Assembly (NCBI GenBank): GCA_030704615.1
Contig: CM060734.1
Span: forward strand, 744,001-808,000
Direction: 5' to 3'
DNA from: Takakia lepidozioides
Lineage: Eukaryota > Plantae > Bryophyta
Length of the DNA: 64,000 nucleotides
The notes beneath the pieces are model-generated. The model did no database searches and was not told where the DNA came from. It saw nothing but the letters and a program-made list of their open reading frames with translations. Both the position numbers and the translations under genes were made by a program. Shown here piece by piece: positions 10,785 through 63,594 of this stretch. The number at the start of each line of letters is the position of its first letter. Position 1 is the stretch's first letter.

Positions 10785-12356
10785 GGAGCTACGTCCTGCC
10801 TCCTTTTTGACACACCTGTCCTGCATCAATTTTCGCACCTTTGCTTAGTCATCCCATCTACCAGCAGCAGCAGCATAGATATTGGACAGCAGAACATAAT
10901 TTCCAGCATCATGTGGATCCACCTTAAGAAGGCAATTCGCTGCACGTTCTGCTACCTCCACACAATTCTGCAAGGTTCCCCACACTGAAGCACCTGGCTT
11001 GCTTGGCATTTTTCTAATGAAGTCCTCTCCCTCATCCAATTGGCCTACGCGGCTCAGAAGGTCCAGCATGCAACCAAAATGCTCCACTCTAGGAGTGAGG
11101 CCATGATCTTGACTCATGAATCGAAGTGGTGACAACCCTCATCCACCAGGCCCAATGTTTACAGGCAGACAGAAGACATACATAGGTGATACAGTTTGGC
11201 TTCAAGCCTTCCAGTCGCATTTGTTCAAATAGTTGGAGCACTCCTTACCACACCCATTCTGACCATATCCCGCAGTCATAGCATTCCATGAGACTACATC
11301 TCAATGGGACATACTGTCAAACACTTAAGTGCATCCTTCATACTCCCACATTTGGCATACATGTCAACCAGGGTATTCTCCAAATTAATATACGATGGAA
11401 TTCCAGCTCTGCTGATGTCATCATGAACTTCTTTGCCTTTTACCAGGGCTCCTTCGATGGAACATGCATTGACAATGCAAATAAATGTCACCTTGTTGGG
11501 CATTACCCCTTCCCGTATCATTTGCTCATACATCCCCAAAGCAAGCCTACCACATCTCTGCTGAGCATATCCTGCAATCATTGTGCTCCAGGAGACCACA
11601 TTTCGCTTAGCCATATTGTCAAACACTTCCCGTGCATCGTTTACACTCCCTCGTTTGGCATACATATCGACAAGGGCATTCTCCAAATTTATGAATGATG
11701 CAATTCCAGTTTTAATGATGTCAGCATGGACTTCTTTCTTCCAGGGCTCCTAGGCTGGCACACAACATTAACACAGTGAATGTGGCCTTGTCAGGCGCTA
11801 CCCCTTCCTGTGCCATTTGCTTATACATCATCTTGAAAGCCTCCCTACTACACCCATGCCGAGCATATCCTGCAATCATTGTGTTCTATGAGACCACATC
11901 ACATTGTACCATGTTGTCAAACACTTTGTGGCCATCCTTGATGCTCCCACATTGATATACATGTTAACAGAGTATTCTCCAAATTGATATAAGAGGGAAC
12001 TCCAGCTCTGATGATGTCAGCATGGACTTCCTTGCCGATTTCCAGAGCTTTTAGGTTGACACAAGCCTTGAGAATGCAAATAACTGTGATGGTGTTTGGC
12101 GTCAAGCCTTCCTGTACCATTTGGCAGTAGATCTCAAAAGCTTGCTTACCATACCATGTTGAGTATATCCTGCCATCATTGTAGTCCATGTGAACACATC
12201 TCAGCAGGTGATTTTGTCAAACAATTGGCGTGCATCCACAAGGCTCCCGCACTTGGCATACATGTTCAGTAGGATGTTGAGTAGAGAGATGTTTGGCTTG
12301 AATCCAGTTTGGAGAATGTGGACGTGCACGTGCTTTCCCATTTGAAGGTCTTCATT
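10785..12356 (-). pseudogene. PLS-class PPR gene with E domain, frameshifted and degenerate
   Basis: Repeated NALVDMYAK.G...DAR.VFD...VVSWSTMIAGYAQ units. E-domain motifs EHFGCMLDLLSRVG and YVLLSNIYAAAAGRWDD. Many frameshifts. Confidence 0.9.
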
Positions 12357-50300: not shown

Positions 50301-50904
50301 AGGAGGCACAAGTGGCATGAAACCAGTCGTCCCATTGGGGGTGGGAGCAAGGAACGGGTGGTTCCAATTCTGGAACCTCGTTGCCAGTGGAACGCAATCT
50401 TGTCCCTTGGATGACATATCATCTAGGGTTGATGTGAAGCCAGCTAGTCAGAGGGTGGAACCAGGTGAGCAAATTTTTACGCAGCGGAAAGTTCCTGCCC
50501 TCCGACTTCCCACAATTTGCGGGTATGGCCTGGGGCTCCCGCCCTCGGGCCCACCCTTAAACAGCGGAAAGTAAAAAATCCATGGCCCAGGTTTTGTATG
50601 AGAGGAATCTTGCTAGCCTTGCTGAAAAGCGGTTGCGGAGGAAAGAAGCAAGGTACAGTCGTTATCAATCCTGAGGTTTTTTATGGTGTTGCATGTTTAA
50701 CCCCTAATGGACGAGGCGACCCGTTTCGGGTCGCGTCAGGGTGGCTACAGAATTCATCCAGGATGTAACTTCGTCGGATGACCTTGGATGAAAAAAAATT
50801 TGAACGAAAGTTGTGCGCCTTGATGTCATGCACCTCCCTGACTTTATGGCACCCTAAAATAATAAATAGAATCTGATATATTTTTAGATATTGGAATTGT
50901 GAGA

Positions 50905-51901
50905 ATCTGTGAAGCCCGGCCACATCATGTTTGTGTGCATTTGCAACTTGTGCAAGCCTGGCAGCCCTGGAGAAGGGCAAAGAGGTGCATGGATATATCA
51001 TCAAAACTGGAATTGTACCAAATGTCAATCTGAACACTGCCCTGGCAGCTCTGGAAAAGGGGAAAGAGGTGCATGGTGACATCTTCAGAGCTGGAATTGT
51101 ACCAGATGTCATTTTGAATAAGACCCTGGTGGACATGTTTGCCAAATGTGGGTGCATTGAGGATGCAAAGGGAGTGTTCAACACTATGGCTGAACGAGAT
51201 GTGGTGTTGTGGAGTGCGATGCTTGCAGGGTATGCACAGCAGAGACATGGGATGGAGATGGTTGAACATGCAGCAGCCTCCATTCTCAGGTGGGATGAAC
51301 AGGGTGTCGCAACTTACGTGTTGCTATCAAACATCTATGCTGCAGCTGGCAGGTGGGATGATACTTCAAGGGTGAGAAAATAATGAAGGTCATATCAGGG
51401 GTTAGGAAGGAGCCAGGTCGCTGCTGCTGCCTGCATTGAGGTTGGCAACAGCATGCACACCTTTGTTGTAGATGACAAATTGCAATCCAAAATTGAAGAA
51501 GTCCATGCTGAGCTCAGAAGACTGTCTGCTGCAGATGAAGGAGGCGGGGTATGTGCCTAACAGACGATTTGTGTTGCATGATGTGGGGGAGGAGAAAAAG
51601 AAATTTTCTTTTTGCCACCACAGTGAGAAGCTAGCCTCTGGTTTTGGGCTGATCAGCACGACCCCTGGGATGCCTCTCCGTCTCACCAAGAATCTACGGT
51701 TGTGTGGTGACTGATGGTTTTGGGCTGATCAGCACGGCCCCTGGGATGCCTCTCCGTCTGATGAAGAATCTCCGGGTGTGTGAAGACTGCCACACCGCCA
51801 CCAAGCTCATCTCAAAGACTGTTGGCTGAACAATTGTGGTACGGGACTCAAACCGCTTTCATCACCTTGAAGATGGGGTTTGTTCTTGTGGGGAATACTG
51901 G
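50905..51901 (+). pseudogene. PLS-class PPR-E-DYW RNA-editing factor pseudogene
   Basis: PPR units, YVLLSNIYAAAGRWDD, PG box, [29 protein letters not shown]. Internal deletions, frameshifts and a ~75-bp tandem duplication (51639-51790). Confidence 0.92.
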
Positions 51902-52740: not shown

Positions 52741-53449
52741 ATGTGAACATCAAGGTGTTACTCCGGCAGCGGCTGCATGTTGGACCTTCTTGGACGCGTG
52801 GGCCGGCAATTTGCCAAGGCATAGGACCTCTTTCAATAGTTATTTTGTGTGCAGATCTCGTAGCGTTAAGATGCAGGCACCTAAGAGTCTTGCAACGACT
52901 TATATTAGAATTCAGCTTGTGTGGTGTGATCAAAAACTTGAAAATTCAAAATGTATATTCTACACCAGTACAATTTGGCATTCTTAGGCCATTTCATAAT
53001 CAATGTGCCCCATTGTGTTGCCTGGGATTGGAGCTATTGAGTAACATAACTGTGCCGCTCTATTGCACTTGGTAAACCCATTGTTTGAGGTAGTTGTTTT
53101 GTGTGCAGATCTGGCAAGACACGCAAGTTTTCATGGCAAAATCAGCAGAAAATAATGTGGGGGTAGAATGCAACACCACGGACATTGTTCAAAAAACTCT
53201 ATGTACACTTTCTGGAGTGTTCATCCAAGTCATTCCCGACATAGGTTGAACATGTTGACCATTACTTTCAATAAAACCACATTCTACATTTTTTTCGCTT
53301 GCAATACCTTAAGTAGGGCAGCAGGAAGTGATTGGTGGTGGTGGATCCACACATGGAAAATGTGTCTGTAGTACTAAAATATATATTCTCAGGGCCTTCC
53401 TCCCGAGCCGCTCAATGTCGAAAGCCACTCGATGGCTGATACAGACATC

Positions 53450-56400
53450 ATAATCCCATGGGGGAATTGGAGTAAGGGGTGTTGTTGAGCAGGTGACTTT
53501 TGTTCCATGAGAATTAGGATAGTGGCAGAGGAGGGGGAGGAACGGGCAACAAGGCGAGCCCATTGGAGGGCTTCATGTGTGAGGTGTCCAGGTGGCGGGT
53601 GGGCAAGGCCATGACCTGACCATGTGTGTTGAGTCGCGGTGCCTTTAGCCCCGGAGACACATTCTCTAGGGTATGGGCTGTCATAGGAAGAGAGTTCAAG
53701 AGGACATGTGAGTGGACTTGAGTAGTAGGTGTGAGTGACTTGAAATGAAGTGATAAGAAATTTGAGGATATTCGATATCTGGCGACTAGCCAGCATACTT
53801 CAGTGGCGAAGTCTTGCCTAGGGGGTTGAAGCTGGTTAGTGTAGATGGCGGAGGCAGTATATCGCTCCCAGAGCCATGCCATCCTTGTGTGAGAGATTGT
53901 TCCTACAAATTGTCCATGGAGTGTGTATATGTTAGTTACGGAATGGCTTGGGCAGAGGACAAGGTGGATTTGGTCAATGTCTTTGTCAGGGTTACATTCG
54001 GAGATTGTTATCTGTATTTTTGGGGCAGCAAGTGGGGTGTGGATGTATCTGTCATCCCTTGATTGGGTTTGGGATACATGTTGTTGGTGGAGGTGGGTTA
54101 GGTATTTAGTGTTAGTCGAATTGTGGAAATTAGTCAGGAGGGTGAGGTTGTGAACGGGGTCGCAATCTTCATGGTTGCCAAAGAGGTCATCTTCTATTTG
54201 CCATGTGTTATCTTCAATGGGATAGTCGGCCCATTTGGGTAAGTGCAGACTACACTGGCGCAAAAACGGCAGACGTGCCCTCCACTTAAAGTCCATGAGA
54301 AAAACTTTGCTACCATTTTAATTAAGGATATTTGTTCAAGTATATGTTTATCTTCATAGGCAATGGTATACTAATCATATTTAGTAAATGGTCTCATCCC
54401 AAATATTTGAGATATTTTTTATTATATATTTTAAAAATATTTTCCCTTATTTAGAAATAATAGCTATTTATTATTATCTTGTAGTTTATGAAAATTTTCC
54501 ATATAACAATAAGTTCCTAGAGACAACAACAATATATATATTCTTAGCAAAGATCTCCACCCAAATATGAAATTTTCAAAATGCTATGGATAAACCGTCA
54601 TTTTGGGGGTTTTTTTGGTAAAAAAAAATCCATAGTGTCTTGATGGATGGATGGAATTGTTCACAAATTTATATTTGTGTCTATTCAAACATTGTGTATG
54701 TAGTGTAAAGTCCATATATGAATTGGTTTTGCACAAATAGGTTTTTCAAATGGCATTTGGGACAATAGATGGACTATGACAGTCCATTGGAATTCCATGC
54801 AAAAGTCCATAGCTTCATGAGATTTCATCCAAATTCCAAAATAATTATACCCACATGTACATATGGTAAGCAGCTAACCCATTCTAAGTCCATTTGCTAT
54901 GAATATATACTTATGTGTATAGGGTGAAGAATAATATGATAGGCAATCAATCGAAAACTGCAAATTGCAGTCCAAACTAAAGCCACTCTAGTCTGCATCT
55001 ACCCATTTACAGAGATCGTATGTATCGACACATGTGGCGCCAAAGGCGTCCAGTGAAGTTTGGGTTTTGATGCCATGGATAGCCTCAATAACGAAGGCTT
55101 CTGGGTGTTCTGGGTTTGTTGGATAGGAGTTAAGTGTCGGGGCGGTATGATTTGGGAAGCTAGGGGGGGTAGATTGGGATTGAGTAGGTGTGGGGAGTGG
55201 AGGGGAGGTGGTGGGGGTGTGTCATGTGTGGGATGTTCATGCATGTTATGGGAGTTTTTTAGCTGCTGGAGTATTGAGGTGGCTGGAGCTGTTCTGAATT
55301 CGGGGAGGAGGTCTTGCTGGTTGTGTGGGAAGAGTAAACAATGGAATCACAATCCAGGGTACATGAGACCGTTGGGTGGCAAAATAGAGAGCAGAGGTGT
55401 GATAGATATCTACATGTTTTGATGGTGGCTCGAGAATGTCTTTGGGTGAATTGTGTGGGTGTTAAGAGCCGTGTCCCTGTGGCAGTGGTAAGTTGGGTAA
55501 GGCTAGAGATACTACGTTGTTTGAAGTATGCCAAAATGAGTTTTTTCTGTGGTGGGTGGGAGTGTTCAAATTGTGTGTGGGAGGGGCTTTGAAGCCATGC
55601 ACGTTCAAGTGGGGAGATGGTGTTGGGGTAGCTTGGTAGGTCGGTTTGTATACTGATCTTCAGTTGTCTTAGGATAAACAGTGTGCGGGCGGTTGGGGAG
55701 TGAAGGCATGATTGGGGATAGAGGGTGGGAAGGGAATAAAGCCCATTGTATTTACCCGCTAGGTGTTTGAGGAGGCCTCTGAAAATGAGTCCTAAGCGAC
55801 CGGGGTCGTTTAGGGCTTTTGTAATTGTGAACCAAGGGTGCGGGCGTATGAGATGATGAGGGGACTAGAGCCTATGCCATAGCTATCATGTGGGAGTTGG
55901 GTAAGAGCGTTCGGGGTGCTAGTGGGTAGGCCACATATACATTTGGTGAGTTGAACAACATTTTTATCAATTTCTTTGATGTCTGGTAAAGAGAAGGGGG
56001 CGGCATGAAAGGCGTATTGTACTTGGGTTTTGAGGACTGTGTTGATGATGGCAAGCTTGGGGCGGATCTCGAACCCCTATTTCATGACCTCCTCTTTAAT
56101 TTTTTCCAACTCTGCTACCAGCTCCACCGTATACCACACTCTTGGAAGCATAGCAGGACCATATTACTATTAAAAAAAGGTGACCCCATGGACCTTGGTA
56201 ACTACAAACCTATCGCACTAGCTAATACTATATACAAACTATTCACTAGCACCCTGACAACAATGTTGTCTACCTATGGGGAACAACACCGGATCCTCAG
56301 CGACCCACAAGAAGGTTTTTGTGCTACGCGGAGTATCACCAGACAGATACAATATGTCATGTCAGCTCTGGAAGATGCAAAACTGACCGAACAGGACATT

Positions 56401-58571
56401 TATCTTCTCTACATCGACTTCAAAAATGCCTTCTGATCCCTAGACCACCCCCGCCTGCTCGCTGTCATGACAGATTTAGGATACCCTACAGATGCTATCC
56501 AACTCATTGGTAACATCTACACCAACAGCACCACAGAATACGCTGGTTCTTACTATGGTTCCACGCCTCCTATTCCCATCCTTCATGGAACCATTCAAGG
56601 TGACACTCTGAGCCCTTATCTCTTCATCATATTCCTTGAACCCCTGCTCAGATGGCTCGCCAGTAGAAACCTACAAAACCTCCCCTAATGAAATCACTGC
56701 AGCAGCTTATGCTGACGACCTTGCCATACTTGTACACAACCTCAACATCTTAACCGACAGGTGGACAAACTTGTCCGCTTCAACCAATGGTCTGGCATGG
56801 AGCTCAGCCTCCACAAATGTGCGGTCACTGCTGTCATACATTGCAGCAAACTCACAAAATCCACCATAGCCTCCCACTGCAAACTCCACATACATTACCA
56901 ACAAAAACCCTTCCCTTTCTTAGGCCCAGACGAACCCTACACCTATCTTGGCATGCTTGACTTTGCATAAACAAGTGGATGCGTGTTGGCTTGGATGCAG
57001 GCAGTTAGAGACTGTGGGTGTGTATGAAGTCGATGCGTGCGACCATATTTCATCCCGAATGTCACCAGGTTTGGTTAATAGGTGGCCTAGTCTGTGTTTG
57101 AGACAGTCGATGGGGGGGTTAATTGCAGGATTGAAGATAGCTTTGTGGGCTCGTTTAGGGTGTTCATGTAATAGTTTGCCAAAGGAGGCAACACTTTTTT
57201 TGTGATTGGCTGTGGCCTTTTCTTTTGTGATAAGGTATGTCGGTTTTTTTGCATTACGACCGATTTTGGATAGGGAGGCAAGCCATTGGGGAAGGGAGGG
57301 GGTGTCCATGGGTGGAGGTAGGAGCGGTTGGCATATTTCTAATGTATTTAAACAGGTTATGCGCTCCAGTTGTTATATGTCGGGGGTGGGGAGCGGGGTA
57401 TGACGGCAAGGGCCCGTCGGATGGTGTGGTAGATATTGAGGTGGGAGGACCATGCCCGTTTCTGGGTCCTAGTGAGATATCCGCCGTTTTGCTTTGAGCG
57501 GGCGGTTTGTGGGAGGTCTAGAGGAGCTGAGCATATGGCTAAGACACTTTTGGTCATGTCTAGCATTGTAGATGAGAGGATAATCTCAGCCTCGGTCCAT
57601 GCGGCCTCGGGAGATAAGAGTGTATTAGTGTCTGAGAGGGTAGAGGAGATTTTATGTATGAAGATAGAGGAGGCGGTGTGGAAGTGTTCTTGGAAGGCCT
57701 TGAGATTGTTAAGTAGGATGGGTGATAGAATTCTGGGTTGAGGGGGTGGGGTGTGTACATCCGGGAGGGGTCGGAAGGGGATAAGAGATGGGGGAATAGA
57801 GATAGAGATCGGGTAGTGATCGGAATTGCATAGACTATTGATATGGACATGGTTGTGAAGATATGTGGGGATTTCATTACTAGATCTGAGGTAAAAGCCA
57901 TCAAGCAAGCTTATGGAGGAGTAGTGGAGACCCCCTTGTCGGGAGTAGTGATAATCGGTGGGGATATATTTGAGCTTTAAAGACTGAGTGAATTTGGCCC
58001 AGTCGTGATCTGGGTCCGAAGGTGATTTGTGAACACCATTATATGAGTGACCTAACAGTGCAATGTCCCTGTTAAAGTCCCCTGCTAGGATGACGTGATG
58101 GTGCTGGTGGTCTGGGTGGGTGACTGTCTGGGAAATACTATGTAGTATTTCCGGTATGAGGGGAGGTCATTTGTATGAGAGGGCATATATAAATGTATAA
58201 GGGTAATGGGGCATAGTGCTGGTGGGTGTAGTTGGATAATTTGTAGGTGTGAGCGGATAGGGATAGGGACGGTGATTTTGGTAGTGGTGCTAGGAGAATG
58301 GTGTGTGCGGAGGATGCCCAGTGCAACGCCGCCCCTAATGGGCTTATAGGGTGCGGAGCGGCGTAGGAGACATTGTTGAGTAGTTAGAGGGTTACCGTAA
58401 AATAGATGATAGTTGGGAAGTAGTTTGTTTAAGTAAGAACTGCTAGTGTTATTGGTGTGGAGTTTGGTTTCCTGCAGGAGGAAGACATGTGGTTGTGCTG
58501 TGTTAGAGAAGAGGTGAAGCAGGCTTTGGATACTAGTGGCTAAGGCGCCCACGTTCCATAATGTGATGGTG
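53450..58571 (-). mobile_element. Non-LTR retrotransposon (APE-RT with long C-terminal extension: chromodomain and PCIF1-like domain); RT core inverted, nested TIR element, 5' end interrupted by a gypsy element
   Basis: APE: TLWNVGAL, LLQETKLH, GDFN (~58075), LDGFY, SDHYPI. RT on the + strand 56068-56955 (NYKPIALANTIYKLF, YIDFKNAF, GTIQGDTLSPYLF, YADD, YTYLG). Post-RT domain resumes on the - strand from ~56065. Confidence 0.9.
54237..55004. mobile_element. Non-autonomous TIR element (768 bp) with 4-bp TSD, Sola-like
   Basis: TIRs GGGTAAGTGCAGACTACACTGG / CCACTCTAGTCTGCATCTACCC. TSD ATTT at 54233-54236 and 55005-55008. Excision restores the LINE reading frame. Superfamily call is tentative. 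Confidence 0.85.
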
Positions 58572-59297
58572 TGTCGCGGCCCTTTGCCTTGAGGGCAGGG
58601 GGTCGGGACACATGAGGGGCTGCCCCTGTGGTGGGGGCAGTGGCAGCGATAGGTACGGGGGGCTGAAGCACCCTTGAGTGCCCAAGGCACTCAAGGAGGC
58701 GGAGGTGCTCACTAGGTGGAGCCCCGCACACCGGGATGCGGTGGGGGTGGCTTCACAAAGGGGTGGTGGTAGCTTAGCGGGACTTAGTGGGGGTGGCATA
58801 GGACTCACCTTGGGGCGGAGACCTCGTGGTGGGAGTCGTGGGGAGTCTTGGGACTCATCACGGTCCATAGGGGCCGTGGTGGATGGGCCAAGTCTCACCG
58901 CGACTCATCACCGGGAGTCGAGGGTTTTCGTGGTGGTTCGCCATAAAATGGCATGGTTGTTTGTGAAACCCCCGCGGACAGCTACAGAAGTATATATAGG
59001 GAGTAGTAACCCCGAGAACGGTGCAAGCCCGTTGGTGACCAAAAACTAGTGAGTAAGCGAGCGAGCCGGAAAGCGACCAAAGAGTGGGGAGCTGTTCCGG
59101 ACTGCCAACTACCAAGGGAATTCCCGCTGGGCCCAAATCGGTGGAGGGTTCTTTGGGAGATCAAAGGGGGACCGTTATGCCCCGGTGAGTAGCCGAAGCT
59201 CCAAGTTGGCCCGGCGGCCAGGTTGGGAGTTAGGCGCGCGCATCAAAGCGAGTAACTATGACTTGAAGGGGAGCTTACCGAAGTGAGGTGCGCGACA
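58572..59297 (+). repeat. 5' LTR (726 bp)
   Basis: TGTCGCG...CGCGACA termini; matches the sequence from 63595. Confidence 0.95.
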
Positions 59298-59299
59298 CT

Positions 59300-59311
59300 T
59301 GGTATCAGAGC
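59300..59311 (+). promoter_or_regulatory. Primer-binding site, tRNA-iMet
   Basis: TGGTATCAGAGC, 2 nt after the LTR. Confidence 0.93.
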
Positions 59312-62300
59312 TTAGAGTTCAGTACGTGATCGTCCTTGGGATTGGCCTCATCATGGGGTCGGGCAAGCCAAAACGAAAGCGGAACGGCCCAAAAGATGAT
59401 GATCCTGGTGAGCCCGATGGGGGCGACGTGTCACCGAGGCGGCCGTTTGAGGAAGCGATGCATGATTCCGAAAACAAGGCCGCTCAAGAGCGGGAGGAAT
59501 CCGAGGAGTCGGAGCCCGAGGAATCCCTGAGAGCTCCGACCGACCAACAGATGCCTCCCATGCCGGCAGCCTTTTGGGAAGGGTTGTTGGCGCAGTTTGG
59601 CAGGACGCTGAAAGACGTGTTGAAGGCGGCTAATGCCACTTCCACTGAGGCAAAGTTTAAGGTGAAGCCTAAGGAACCCGGCACCTTCAAGGGCGTCCGA
59701 AATCGGAAGGCACTCAACACCTGGCTCCTGGAGCTAGAGCAGTACTTCCGGGTGGCCAAGTTGAGTGACGAGGATCGGGTGGAAGTGGCTCCCACCTATT
59801 TGAGGGGCTATGCTCAACAATGGTGGCAGAAACGCCTTCACGACCAAGGTCCAAGCCCGGAAACCTTGAACTGGAGTGGGTTCAAGGAATTGATGAAAAG
59901 ACAGTTTGTGCCCCTCAACGCGTCCTGGCTTGCCCGGGACAAGATGAGGAATTTGAAGCAAACAGATGACATTCGGGGATATGTCCAGGCTTTCAATGTG
60001 CTTTTGCTCGAAGTCGCGGACATGGCAGAACCAGAAATGGTCTTCAACTTTGTGGCGGGATTGGCCCCATGGGCCAGGCGGAAGTTGGAGGAGAAGCCAC
60101 CTAAGACTTTGAACGAGGCAATTGAGAGGGCTGAATGTTTCTCGGATGTCTCTAGGGGTGAAAGACAAGGCCATACGGAGCTGAACCACAAGAAGACCCG
60201 GCGGGAAGGTGACCCCTTCCGAACGGAAAAGAAGTGGGATAGACCACGCGGCGACAATGACACGTGGAAATCGAAGGGAGGGCCTTTACACGTCAAGGCG
60301 GTACCCGGTGCTTCGAAAGGAAAAGCGGGTGGAGCGGCTTATGGCGGACAGAAGACCACCTTTGATGGAGTGTGTTTCAATTGCGGGGAGCCCGGGCACA
60401 TGGCCAAGAAGTGCACAAAACCTTGACAATTGAACATGACTCGGGCAACCACGGAGCTGTCAGAAGATACCATCAGTCGCTTGGTGGAAGCGGTGGTCGC
60501 CAGGACTTGCAAGGTAGGCAACTATTCTTGTGAGTTGTATCAGGAAACTAGCGCCCTACGTAAAGGGAGTCAGTTATTGTTTGTGGATGGGATAATATCC
60601 GAAACTAATGTGTCGTTGTTGGTGGACACATGAGCGCCGCACTCCTTCATGACGCCGACGGCGGCGCAAAAGTTGGGACTTCCGACAAGTGACGTGGGGG
60701 CCTCTATTGAGGTGCATTCTGCCAAAGGAGAACCACAACTGGCGACAAGGTTGGCATTTGATGTTCCTCTTCAACTGGGGAGTTGGGAGGGACGTGAGAA
60801 TTTCACCATCTGCGAGATCGATGGAGTGGATCTCATTTTGGGGATGACCTTTTTGAGCAAATCCGGAGCGGTCATAGATGGTCGCAAGAGAGTAGTCACA
60901 CTGCCATGTGGGAATGGTGGTGAGGTCTTACGAGTGTCAGAAACGCCCAAACCCGTGGGAGGGCGAATAAGCCTTCTGTCAGCAAGGGAGTGGGCCGTGG
61001 AGGAGGCACATGAGCCCCAGTTTTTGCTCTACATTAGAGAAGTGAAGGGGGAAGGCGATGGGGAGCCGAGCCCAGATTGGATCAAGGGGATTTTGGAGAA
61101 ATACCAGGATGTGATGCCGGAGGATTTACCAAGCGGTTTGCCACCGCGAAGAGGAGTTGACCACAAGATTGAGGTGATACCGGGATCGGAACCGCCTGCC
61201 AAGGCGCCCTACCAGTTGAGCCACAGAGAGTTGGTCGAGCTGAAGACTCAGCTCAAAGATATAATGTCAAAGGGGTACATCCGGCCGAGTAAGTCACCTT
61301 ACGGAGCCCCGGTGCTATTTGCAGATAAAAAAGATGGGACGCTGCGGATGTGTGTCGATTACAGGGCTCTGAATAAGGTGACTATCAAAAACCGATACCC
61401 TTTGCCAAGGATCGACGACCTCTTCAATCGGTTGGTAGGAGCGAAGTATTTCAGCCGGATCGACTTGCGCTTCGGCTATCATCAAATTCGGGTGGCGGAA
61501 GGAGATGAGGAGAAGACCGCGTGCATGACAAGGTATGGTTCATATGAATTCTTGGTGATGCCTTTTGGGCTCACCAATGCACCAGCGACATTTAGCACGC
61601 TGATGAACAGCCTTTTTCAGGAGTGGTTGGATGGCTTTGTGATCGTGTACATCGACGACATCTTGGTGTACTCGAAAACGGAGGAGCACCTGGAGCCCCT
61701 GAAAAGGGTGTTCCAAAAATTGCGGGAAGGGAAGCTATACGCCAAAGCTTCAAAGTGCGAATTCGGGGTCACGAAAGTGGAGTTCTTGGGGCATGTGATT
61801 ACACAGGATGGGATCAAAATGGATGACAGAAAGGTGAGGGCGATCTTGGACTGGGAGCCTCCGACTTCGGTCCCGGGAGTGCGATCCTTCTTAGGACTCG
61901 CCTCCTATTACCGGAAGTATGTGAGAAATTTCGCCAAGATCGCGGGGCCGCTGTCGGACCTTCTGTGTAAATCCAAAGTCTGGGTATGAAACACCTTTTG
62001 TGGCCAAGCTTTTGCTGAATTGAAGCAGCGGATGGCGGAAGCTCCAGTCTTGAAAATCCCGGAGTTCGATCGTCCGTTCGAGATTCATACGGATGCGTCG
62101 GACTTCGCGATTGGGGGTGTACTTATGCAAGATGGACGTCCAGTGGCTTACGAAAGTAAGAAACTAAATGAAGTGGAGCGACAGTGGCCGACGCACGAAA
62201 AAGAGATGAAGGCGGTGGTGCATTGCCTTGAGCTTTGGCGCCACTATGTTGGTACCAACCCAATGAAGGTGTTCACGGACAATGTTACGGTGAAGTATTT

Positions 62301-63594
62301 TGCCACGCAGCCCAAGTTATCCCCAAAACAACTTAGGTGGCAAGATACTTTGGCAGTGTTTGACGTGGATATCGTACAAACCGGGACGTGACAATGTGGT
62401 GGCCGATGCTTTAAGTAGAAAGCAGCAGCTCATGTTGGTGTACAGGGGCGAGACGGCGCTCCAAAGGAAGATCCGGAAGGCTTGCCGGAAGGATGAGCTG
62501 GCGAAGTCCGTGATGCAGGACTTGAGGAGGGGGGTTAAATCGCAGTTCCACTTGCAAAATGGACTGCTCCGGTATAAGCAAAAGCATCTCTACGTGCCGA
62601 AGGGAGGGATCAGAGATAGTCTCTTGAGAGAATGCCATGATAGCCCGCTTGCGGGCCACGGCGGAGCCAAGCGCACTGCGGCACTCTTGAAGAAAGAGTA
62701 TTTCTGGCCCAAACTGAGGGAGGAGGCAGAGGAGTATGTCAAGACATGCATTACATGCCAACAAAATCGGAGCGAGTACAAAAATCAAGTGGGGCTATTA
62801 CAACCCTTGCCGATTCCAGAGGGGACTTGGGAAAACGTCTCGATGGATTTCATGACTGCTATGCCGCTGTCAAAAGGATTCGATTCAATCATGGTGGTGG
62901 TGGATAGGTTCAGTAAAATGGGCCATTTCATCCCCATCAAGGAGACGGCAACGGCACAGGAAACATGACGACTTTACTTCGCTCACGTCTTAAAGCATCA
63001 TGGAGTCCCGAAGGATATTGTCTCGGACCGCGATCCAAAGTTTACGAGTAAATTTTGGAGGGCACTTTGGAAGAAGATGGGGACGAGGCTGAAGATGAGC
63101 ACCGCCTTCCGACCTACGACCGACGGCCAAACGGAAAGAATGAATTCCGTAGTGAAGCAGATCTTGCGGAATTACGTGTCGGCAGACCAAACAGACTGGG
63201 TGGAACACTTAGACACGACAGAGTTCTGTTATAAGGGGGTTCGAGATGAACCCTTGCGCAAGGTGATGCCAAAAGCGGCATCATGAGCGATCGCAAGCAA
63301 TGTTGTTGCAGTAAGGCGATTCGATCCTCGGGGAGGATCGTTCCTTGGCCTTGAAGTAGGCCAATAAGAGTGCACTGGGAGGAGCTTGAGAGGCTCCATC
63401 CCTGGCCGAGACTTGGAGGAAGTCGGCCGAACTAGCTAGTGGAGAGTAGAGTCAAGTGTGGGGTTTGGTTCTTTGCCATGGGACGCCATGGTACGGAAAC
63501 AAACTCCTTGATGTGGGACGCCACAACTTGGATGTTCGTTTCTACAAAATGGACAAGTCGATGAGGACATCGACTCCCTGTTGGTAGGGGTGTG

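What the first reader, a model, noticed from the sequence alone, without database searches (positions are those of the whole stretch)
53500..53772. PCIF1/CAPAM-like N6-adenine methyltransferase domain with NPPF changed to HPPP
Seen: ILKFLITSFQVTHTYYSSPLTCPLELSSYDSPYPRECVSGAKGTATQHTWSGHGLAHPPPGHLTHEALQWARLVARSSPSSATILIL. Known: the PCIF1 catalytic core reads approximately VFEALHRLFGVSFECFASPLNC..RQYCSAFPDTDGYFGSRG.......SGSFEANPPF...L....RLLESS....SFIVFI (recalled from memory). The motifs F.V, SPL.C, Y.S..P, G..G, SG...A.PP and the final hydrophobic strand are colinear with similar spacing. Motif IV is AHPPP (HPPP at 53590-53601), so this copy is probably catalytically altered or dead. Inference: the domain may methylate or bind the element's capped RNA or its cDNA.
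Basis: partly seen in the sequence, partly recalled or inferred. Interest (0 to 1): 0.85.

Follow-up and report, generated by a model that had tools for sequence, protein, structure and literature searches.

The report
Dead PCIF1-like domain in plant LINE
This stretch is a broken, truncated piece of a domain descended from the mRNA-cap adenine methyltransferase PCIF1; the domain is a standard module of a family of plant and algal jumping genes (Dualen-type LINEs), and the His that replaces the catalytic Asn belongs to the whole family, not to this copy.

Summary
The quoted peptide is on the minus strand, and HPPP sits at 53590-53601.

The PCIF1 reading is supported:
- The window piece alone scores weakly in Pfam (PCIF1_WW, E 0.17). 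It does find 101 homologues (best E 4e-26), and those hit PCIF1_WW, some above the curated cut-off.
- Profiles of these homologues find only PCIF1 in the PDB (E 5e-10).
- A model of the closest intact relative matches human PCIF1 residues 419-664 (Z 17.9; next fold Z 7.9).
- A model of the window fragment also ranks all six PCIF1 entries first.

The domain belongs to a LINE with the order APE, RT, chromodomain, PCIF1-like, RNase H, C-terminal CCHC/restriction-like region. That order is colinear on an independent contig.

None of 114 family members has Asn or Asp at the first motif position. His is the family state (79/114), including GC-rich, probably algal, members with HPPH. The aromatic fourth residue is mostly lost. 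The domain evolved under purifying selection (dN/dS about 0.13).

This copy is dead. It has a frameshift with about 25 codons deleted, has lost the last third of the domain plus RNase H and the C-terminal region, and has changed three top-conserved residues.

The scan reported this family before, elsewhere in this genome.

The parts
58088..58569 (-). N-terminal part of the APE-type endonuclease of the LINE. The element's 5' side ends at about 58569, against a very high-copy repeat that I read as the LTR of the neighbouring gypsy element.
   Evidence: Pfam Exo_endo_phos E 0.0065. Translation. Read depth jumps at 58569. A PBS-like TGGTATCAGAGC lies at about 59300.
57360..58166 (-). C-terminal part of the endonuclease (SDHYPI motif) and the linker that follows.
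   Evidence: Translation. Colinear match to L002 2763-3436.
56923..57372 (-). Pre-RT region.
   Evidence: Match to L002 3547-3798.
55990..56967 (+). Reverse transcriptase fingers and palm, inverted relative to the rest of the element in this copy only.
   Evidence: Pfam RVT_1 E 3.7e-7 on the + strand. In L002 the same pieces are colinear on one strand with EN, thumb and the PCIF1-like domain.
55813..56076 (-). RT thumb region.
   Evidence: Match to L002 5061-5306, E 1e-20.
55262..55864 (-). Post-RT linker.
   Evidence: Match to L002 5307-5741.
54230..55001 (.). 772-bp nested insertion that splits the chromodomain. It is flanked by the 7-bp direct repeat CCCATTT and has imperfect terminal inverted repeats.
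   Evidence: DNA contigs of two runs join 54229 to 55002. In-script excision restores one open frame across the chromodomain.
54165..54257 (-). C-terminal half of the chromodomain. The N-terminal half lies beyond the insertion, at about 55002-55075.
   Evidence: Pfam Chromo E 0.05. PDB chromodomains, E 0.009. The closest relative P0001 has Chromo at E 4e-9.
53775..53963 (-). N-terminal part of the PCIF1-like domain (three strands and the WLxxRY helix), in the upstream reading frame.
   Evidence: tblastn of P0001 residues 96-160. These residues are inside the model that aligns with PCIF1 419-664.
53770..53774 (-). Junction of the frameshift and a deletion of about 24-27 codons (the basic loop of intact relatives).
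   Evidence: All homologues jump from 53775 to 53769/53772 and skip 24-27 of their own residues.
53473..53769 (-). Core of the PCIF1-like domain: strand 1 with the SSPLTC loop, the decayed RD..FGS.G loop, strand 4 with AHPPP, the long helix, and strand 5.
   Evidence: 55% identity to P0001. Profile A3 finds PCIF1 6irx at E 3.7e-5. The fragment model gives PCIF1 as top 6 hits, TM 0.70, rmsd 2.4 over 97 columns.
53590..53601 (-). Motif IV equivalent, His-Pro-Pro-Pro, aligned with PCIF1 Asn553-Pro-Pro-Phe556.
   Evidence: Codon positions. Profile alignment. Family column counts.
53443..53472 (-). End of homology. The last third of the domain, RNase H and the C-terminal region are missing from the window.
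   Evidence: tblastn of 11 homologues, including ones carrying RNase H and the CCHC/restriction-like region, finds nothing beyond 53443 anywhere in the window.

Best explanation
The stretch is a decayed, truncated remnant of a PCIF1-derived Rossmann-fold domain. That domain is a regular module of the ORF2 polyprotein of a Dualen-type LINE. The domain order is APE endonuclease, RT, chromodomain, PCIF1-like domain, RNase H, then a C-terminal CCHC/restriction-like region.

Shown here:
- The homology is real, and the domain corresponds to PCIF1 residues 419-664. PCIF1's helical and WW domains are absent.
- In the whole family the catalytic NPPF is replaced by His-Pro-[Thr/Pro/His]-[Asp/Asn/...].
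- The loops that PCIF1 shares with the family stay highly conserved: (S/A)SPL(T/N)C after strand 1, and Asp..FGS.G after strand 2. The Trp equivalent to the cap-contacting W588 is also conserved.
- The domain evolved under purifying selection.

Inferred:
- In active elements the module is no longer a canonical N6-adenine methyltransferase.
- It is kept as a binding module, most likely a pocket for SAM or a nucleotide, or a holder for RNA ends, that helps ORF2p handle its template.
- A non-canonical catalytic role for the conserved His is possible but less likely.

In this window nothing works. The copy has a frameshift and a deletion of about 25 codons. It has lost the C-terminal third of the domain. 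The conserved Asp, Phe and Trp are changed to Glu, Ser and Ser. The RT segment is inverted, a transposon sits in the chromodomain, and RNase H and the C-terminal region are gone.
For: - Pfam: PCIF1_WW is the only hit of the window piece.
- Homologues: 101 found, best E 4e-26. Ten long ones all hit PCIF1_WW, three of them above the curated cut-off, with Chromo upstream and RNase_H downstream.
- Profiles against the PDB find only PCIF1: A1 at 1.2e-7, A2 at 5e-10 with HPP aligned on NPPF and the family Trp on W588, A3 at 3.7e-5.
- Structure: the model of P0001:96-345 has pLDDT 88.9. Its top 6 Foldseek hits are all PCIF1, at 6e-10 to 4e-8. VIA-align gives Z 17.9 over 223 residues on 6irv 419-664, and the next fold scores 7.9. 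The ESM Atlas gives PCIF1 clusters at TM 0.71-0.73 and an RT-bearing cluster at 0.55.
- Window fragment model: PCIF1 fills the top 6, followed by a 100-fold gap in E-value.
- Family columns: His 79/114 and no Asn or Asp at the first motif position; Asp 101/117, Phe 106/116, Trp 105/116. Distant GC-rich members carry HPPH.
- Selection: dN/dS 0.13-0.28 between independent copies.
- Architecture: colinear on L002.
- Defects of this copy.
- Literature: mutating NPPF inactivates PCIF1 (PMC8287941). A catalytically dead PCIF1 is kept in Drosophila (PMC9916840).
Against: - The conserved His, and the well-kept loops where class I methyltransferases bind SAM, are also what an enzyme with altered chemistry would look like. 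No biochemical test exists.
- Cap binding is doubtful. The residue equivalent to E558 is not conserved, and the helical domain that supplies the other half of PCIF1's cap pocket is missing.
- Most family sequences are translated from decayed copies, so the column counts are noisy.
- Both structure models lean on the alignment of intact relatives.
- Assignment to the Dualen clade rests on architecture, not on an RT tree.
Confidence: 0.75

Rival explanations
1. In active family members the domain is a working SAM-dependent methyltransferase with a non-canonical His-Pro-Pro motif. It would mark the element's own RNA (cap-adjacent or otherwise) or its cDNA. The window holds a dead copy of that enzyme.
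For: - His is conserved from land-plant members to distant GC-rich members.
- The loops shared with PCIF1, where class I enzymes hold SAM, are the most conserved columns.
- Purifying selection acted on the domain.
- Some members have HPPY or HPPH, with a ring at the fourth position.
Against: - None of 114 members keeps Asn or Asp, and mutating the NPPF motif inactivates PCIF1.
- The fourth position is mostly Asp, Asn or Thr, so the stacking ring is lost.
- The second Pro is not conserved (Thr32, Pro28, His24).
- The helical domain needed for cap and RNA binding is absent.
Confidence: 0.2
2. The resemblance to PCIF1 is chance or compositional, and the ORF is meaningless.
For: The window piece alone is weak in Pfam (E 0.17) and finds nothing in the PDB by single-sequence search.
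Against: The evidence is transitive through 101 homologues, and only PCIF1 is found by three profiles and by two structure searches with a large gap to the next fold.
Confidence: 0.01
3. A fragment of the host's own PCIF1 gene was captured by, or lies next to, this one LINE copy.
For: LINEs can transduce flanking sequence, and this locus is heavily rearranged.
Against: - The domain sits at the same place, between chromodomain and RNase H, in many independent relatives and on contigs L001-L003.
- It is only about 17% identical to PCIF1.
- It lacks the WW and helical domains.
Confidence: 0.02

Closest known systems
PCIF1/CAPAM, cap-specific mRNA m6Am methyltransferase (Pfam PF12237; PDB 6IRV-6IS0)
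   Same: Same fold and detectable sequence homology over PCIF1 residues 419-664 (Z 17.9; profile E 5e-10). Shared features are the (A/S)SPL(N/T)C loop, the Asp..FGS.G loop, Pro-Pro after strand 4, and the Trp equivalent to W588.
   Different: There is no WW domain and no helical domain. NPPF is replaced by His-Pro-x-x across the whole family, and the E558 equivalent is not kept. The domain is embedded in a retrotransposon polyprotein. In this window it is also frameshifted and truncated.
Drosophila Pcif1, a catalytically dead PCIF1 retained for a non-enzymatic role (PMC9916840)
   Same: It is a precedent for a PCIF1-family protein kept by selection without methyltransferase activity.
   Different: It is a cellular protein that still binds the Pol II CTD through its WW domain, and the LINE domain has no WW. 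I did not compare its motif IV.
Dualen/RandI LINEs (Kojima and Fujiwara 2005; Dualen-4b_cRei, PMC9977147)
   Same: An APE endonuclease N-terminal to RT. Relatives also have RNase H and a C-terminal CCHC plus PD...E/K-like region, and the pairing of both endonucleases is said to be unique to this clade.
   Different: Published domain lists give RT, RNH, APE, RLE and a Josephin-like protease. They do not mention a PCIF1-like domain or a chromodomain. The window copy lacks RNH and RLE. No RT phylogeny was done here.
Other N6-adenine methyltransferases (ZCCHC4, METTL5, KsgA/Dim1/Erm, MmeI)
   Same: Generic class I Rossmann methyltransferase fold (Z 6.5-7.9; ZCCHC4 Foldseek E 1.5e-3).
   Different: They match far more weakly than PCIF1 and show no sequence-profile match.

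Membership tests
PCIF1/CAPAM family (PF12237) | Sequence-profile match to PCIF1_WW at or above the curated cut-off | tested here: inconclusive
   The window piece scores 11.9 bits against a cut-off of 31.1. Its homologues P0010 (39.6), P0098 (39.7) and P0055 (31.2) pass. Profiles of the family find only PCIF1 in the PDB.
PCIF1/CAPAM family (PF12237) | Fold of the PCIF1 methyltransferase domain | tested here: met
   Z 17.9, 223 residues, 6irv 419-664. Foldseek 6e-10. The window fragment model ranks PCIF1 in the top 6, TM 0.70.
PCIF1/CAPAM family (PF12237) | Catalytic NPPF motif after strand 4 | tested here: not met
   HPPP in the window. The family has His 79, Tyr 15, Phe 8 of 114 at the first position and no Asn or Asp. 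The fourth position is mostly Asp, Asn or Thr.
PCIF1/CAPAM family (PF12237) | Helical domain and WW domain (cap/RNA groove and Pol II CTD binding) | tested here: not met
   The model aligns only with PCIF1 419-664. Upstream of the domain is a linker and a chromodomain.
PCIF1/CAPAM family (PF12237) | SAM binding and m6Am methyltransferase activity | not testable with these tools
   The only evidence is conservation of the strand-1 and strand-2 loops shared with PCIF1. No coordinates or assay were available.
Dualen/RandI LINE clade | APE-type endonuclease N-terminal to RT | tested here: met
   Exo_endo_phos E 0.0065 and RVT_1 E 3.7e-7 in the window. The order is colinear in L002.
Dualen/RandI LINE clade | RNase H downstream of RT | tested here: not met
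   It is absent from the window copy because of truncation. It is present in relatives: RNase_H E 1.7e-14 in P0002 and P0009, and colinear in L002.
Dualen/RandI LINE clade | Second, restriction-like endonuclease with a CCHC motif at the C-terminus | tested here: inconclusive
   P0002 and P0009 have a C-x2-C...H-x4-C...RHN pattern followed by PD...E-x-T/K-like motifs, which I read against R2-type RLE from memory. There is no Pfam or PDB sequence hit. The region is absent from the window.
Dualen/RandI LINE clade | RT groups with Dualen/RandI in a phylogeny | not tested

The most novel reading that the evidence does not exclude
Dualen-type LINEs of the green lineage have carried a PCIF1-derived domain with a conserved His-Pro-Pro signature since before land plants and the GC-rich (probably algal) members diverged. 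In this reading the domain is functional. It would be either a non-canonical SAM-dependent enzyme or a reader of RNA 5' ends acting on the element's own transcript. That would make it a retrotransposon-encoded epitranscriptomic activity.
Probability: 0.2. Interest if true: 0.8.

Novelty: new variant of a known kind. Interest (0 to 1): 0.5.

Why it matters
If the family-level picture holds, a LINE clade acquired the catalytic domain of a cap-adenine methyltransferase, changed its active-site motif, and kept it under selection. No LINE is known to encode an RNA-modification module. The papers I could search list Dualen domains without it, and searches for PCIF1 together with retrotransposon terms found nothing relevant. 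The family offers a natural series of PCIF1-fold pseudo-enzymes, or altered enzymes, for asking what the fold does without Asn-Pro-Pro-Phe. The copy in this window adds only one more dead example.

Tried and rejected
- Single-sequence phmmer of the window piece against the PDB found nothing.
- The search for homologous proteins with P0090 residues 24-290 returned only the query itself, apparently swamped by low-complexity words.
- The same tool with the divergent alignment A2 gave only a few GC-rich fragments. All have HPPH, none has a canonical motif, and no cellular PCIF1 appeared.
- A PDB sequence search of the C-terminal half of P0009 found only RNase H and no restriction-like endonuclease.
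- No inverted repeats mark the RT inversion breakpoints. The read contigs were too short to bridge them, so an assembly artefact is not excluded.
- No RNA run held the stretch, which says nothing about expression.
- Rfam found nothing in the very high-depth 58300-59500 region.
- The Boulias 2019 paper (PMC6703822) was not held.
- I translated the chromodomain restored by excising the insertion only inside a script. The joined peptide was not sent to any search, as the rules require.
- Chance resemblance and capture of a host gene were considered and rejected (see rivals).

Full report
**Context.** The window is plant nuclear DNA. It holds phenylalanine ammonia-lyase exons, PPR repeats, gypsy elements and a MULE-like transposase. 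The finding lies on the minus strand inside a degenerate non-LTR retrotransposon.

**Observation.** By codon count, His-Pro-Pro-Pro is encoded at 53601-53590.

**Is it PCIF1-like? Sequence evidence.**
- On its own the window piece is weak. PCIF1_WW is its only Pfam hit, at E 0.17 and 11.9 bits, and single-sequence search of the PDB finds nothing.
- An exhaustive phmmer search of 1.84 billion representatives found 101 homologues, 37 of them below 1e-10. The best is P0001, at 55% identity and E 4e-26.
- All ten longer homologues hit PCIF1_WW. P0010 (39.6 bits), P0098 (39.7) and P0055 (31.2) pass the curated cut-off of 31.1. Chromo lies upstream and RNase_H downstream.
- Three profiles built from these homologues find only PCIF1 in the PDB:
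  - A1 (39 sequences): 1.2e-7.
  - A2 (10 divergent members): 5.2e-10 and 6e-10.
  - A3 (limited to the segment that survives in the window): 3.7e-5.

**Is it PCIF1-like? Structure evidence.**
- AlphaFold2 on P0001:96-345 gave pLDDT 88.9 and pTM 0.85.
- The six best Foldseek hits are the six PCIF1/CAPAM entries, at E 6e-10 to 4e-8. Next is ZCCHC4 at 1.5e-3.
- VIA-align gives Z 17.9 over 223 residues on human PCIF1 419-664, against Z 7.9 for the next fold.
- The ESM Atlas search returns a Chlorophyta PCIF1_WW cluster (TM 0.71), vertebrate PCIF1 (TM 0.73) and an RT-bearing cluster (TM 0.55).
- A model of the window fragment itself (pLDDT 87.9) again puts all six PCIF1 entries first. TM is 0.70, rmsd 2.4 Å over 97 columns, and identity about 25%, with a 100-fold gap in E-value to the next hit.
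- Both models are driven by the alignment of intact relatives. A fragment like this would not fold on its own.

**Host element.**
- Window pieces searched against an 8.4-kb metagenome contig (L002, plant-like) are colinear on one strand. The order is endonuclease, pre-RT, RT, thumb, linker, PCIF1-like domain, then RNase H and the C-terminal region.
- P0002 and P0009 end in a CCHC...RHN pattern followed by PD...E-like motifs. From memory these resemble the R2-type restriction-like endonuclease. No database hit confirmed this.
- The pairing of APE with RLE is described as unique to Dualen LINEs (PMC9977147). The domain legend in that paper lists RT, RNH, APE, RLE and a Josephin-like protease, but no PCIF1-like domain.
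- Literature searches for PCIF1 with retrotransposon terms, and for the Pfam name, found nothing relevant.
- I therefore call the element Dualen-type by architecture. No RT tree was made.

**Motif IV.**
- The A2 profile aligns the family's Ala-His-Pro-Pro with PCIF1's Ala-Asn-Pro-Pro-Phe. The chain index converts to human N553-F556. The same profile aligns the family's Pro..x-Trp with the Trp of FIPEW, which is W588. W588 and E558 are reported cap contacts (PMC13290413).
- Column counts over 114 family sequences:

| Motif IV position | Residue counts |
|---|---|
| 1 | His 79, Tyr 15, Phe 8, no Asn or Asp |
| 2 | Pro 84 |
| 3 | Thr 32, Pro 28, His 24 |
| 4 | Asp 31, Asn 30, Thr 19, Tyr 11 |

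- Distant GC-rich members, probably algal, carry HPPH.
- So His in place of Asn is the old family state. Only the last Pro is special to this copy, because P0001 has AHPPN.
- Mutating NPPF inactivates PCIF1 (PMC8287941). Canonical N6-adenine methylation is therefore unlikely for the family.
- The columns shared with PCIF1 are still the best conserved: SSPLTC; Asp 101/117, Phe 106/116 and Gly 102/117 in RD..FGS.G; Trp 105/116; and the W588 equivalent at 57/70. From general knowledge of class I methyltransferases, the loops after strands 1 and 2 hold SAM. Retained SAM binding is thus plausible, but it is inferred, not shown.
- The E558 equivalent is not conserved, and the helical domain that forms the other side of PCIF1's cap pocket is absent. 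This weakens a cap-reader model.

**Selection.** Nei-Gojobori estimates on the domain give dN/dS of 0.13 (L001 vs L002 and L001 vs L003, dS about 1) and 0.28 (L002 vs L003). Window against the others gives about 0.3, with saturated dS. The domain was under purifying selection in the active lineages.

**State of this copy.**
- Every homologue's match jumps from 53775 to 53769/53772 and skips 24-27 of its own residues. This is a deletion of the basic loop plus a frameshift.
- Homology stops at 53443-53473. The last third of the domain, RNase H and the C-terminal region are absent from the whole window.
- Within the surviving core, the conserved Asp, Phe and W588-equivalent Trp are Glu, Ser and Ser.
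- The RT segment 55990-56967 lies on the opposite strand from the rest of the element.
- A 772-bp insertion splits the chromodomain.
- The 5' side abuts a very high-copy repeat at 58569.
- No RNA run held the region, which is not evidence of silence.

**Conclusion.** The alteration is a family trait, and this copy is a dead relic. The most likely family-level role is a non-catalytic binding module retained in ORF2p. An active non-canonical enzyme remains possible at about 0.2. Earlier notes of this scan reached similar conclusions on other pieces of this genome. I re-derived them independently here, but I did not find the intact-looking distant relatives that one of those notes mentioned.

Noticed in passing
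window 54230-55001: A 772-bp nested insertion flanked by the 7-bp direct repeat CCCATTT, with imperfect terminal inverted repeats. DNA contigs from two runs carry the empty site. Removing the insertion in a script restores one open frame across a complete chromodomain. Read depth here is 5-20 times that of the LINE, so it is a higher-copy element.
   Followed up: yes
window 55990-56967: The RT fingers and palm segment of the LINE is on the + strand, while the endonuclease, thumb, chromodomain and PCIF1-like parts are on the - strand. The relative L002 is colinear, so this is an inversion of about 1 kb specific to this copy, or an assembly error. There are no flanking inverted repeats, and the read contigs were too short to bridge the breakpoints.
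   Followed up: partly
window 58569-59311: Read depth jumps by three to four orders of magnitude from 58569 onward, and one contig from a run guessed to be RNA covers 58569-58693. A TGGTATCAGAGC primer-binding-site-like sequence at about 59300 precedes the gag-pol ORFs at 59299-62968. I read the stretch as the 5' LTR of a very abundant gypsy element that bounds the LINE. Rfam found nothing there.
   Followed up: partly
P0002 and P0009 (relatives), C-terminal 250 residues; L002 7714-8427: The C-terminal region after RNase H has a CCHC...RHN pattern and PD...E-like motifs that resemble R2-type restriction-like endonucleases. It has no Pfam or PDB sequence hit. A fold prediction would settle the Dualen assignment.
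   Followed up: partly
L001 4843-11401: The metagenome contig carrying a relative of the domain also carries DUF4216 and DUF4218 genes, which I know as plant transposase-associated domains. These 'metagenome' homologues are therefore probably plant DNA.
   Followed up: no
window 50684-51383 and 11294-11686: PPR-repeat ORFs (E/DYW-type, to my eye) lie on opposite strands close to the LINE's truncated 3' side. Their relation to the truncation was not examined.
   Followed up: no
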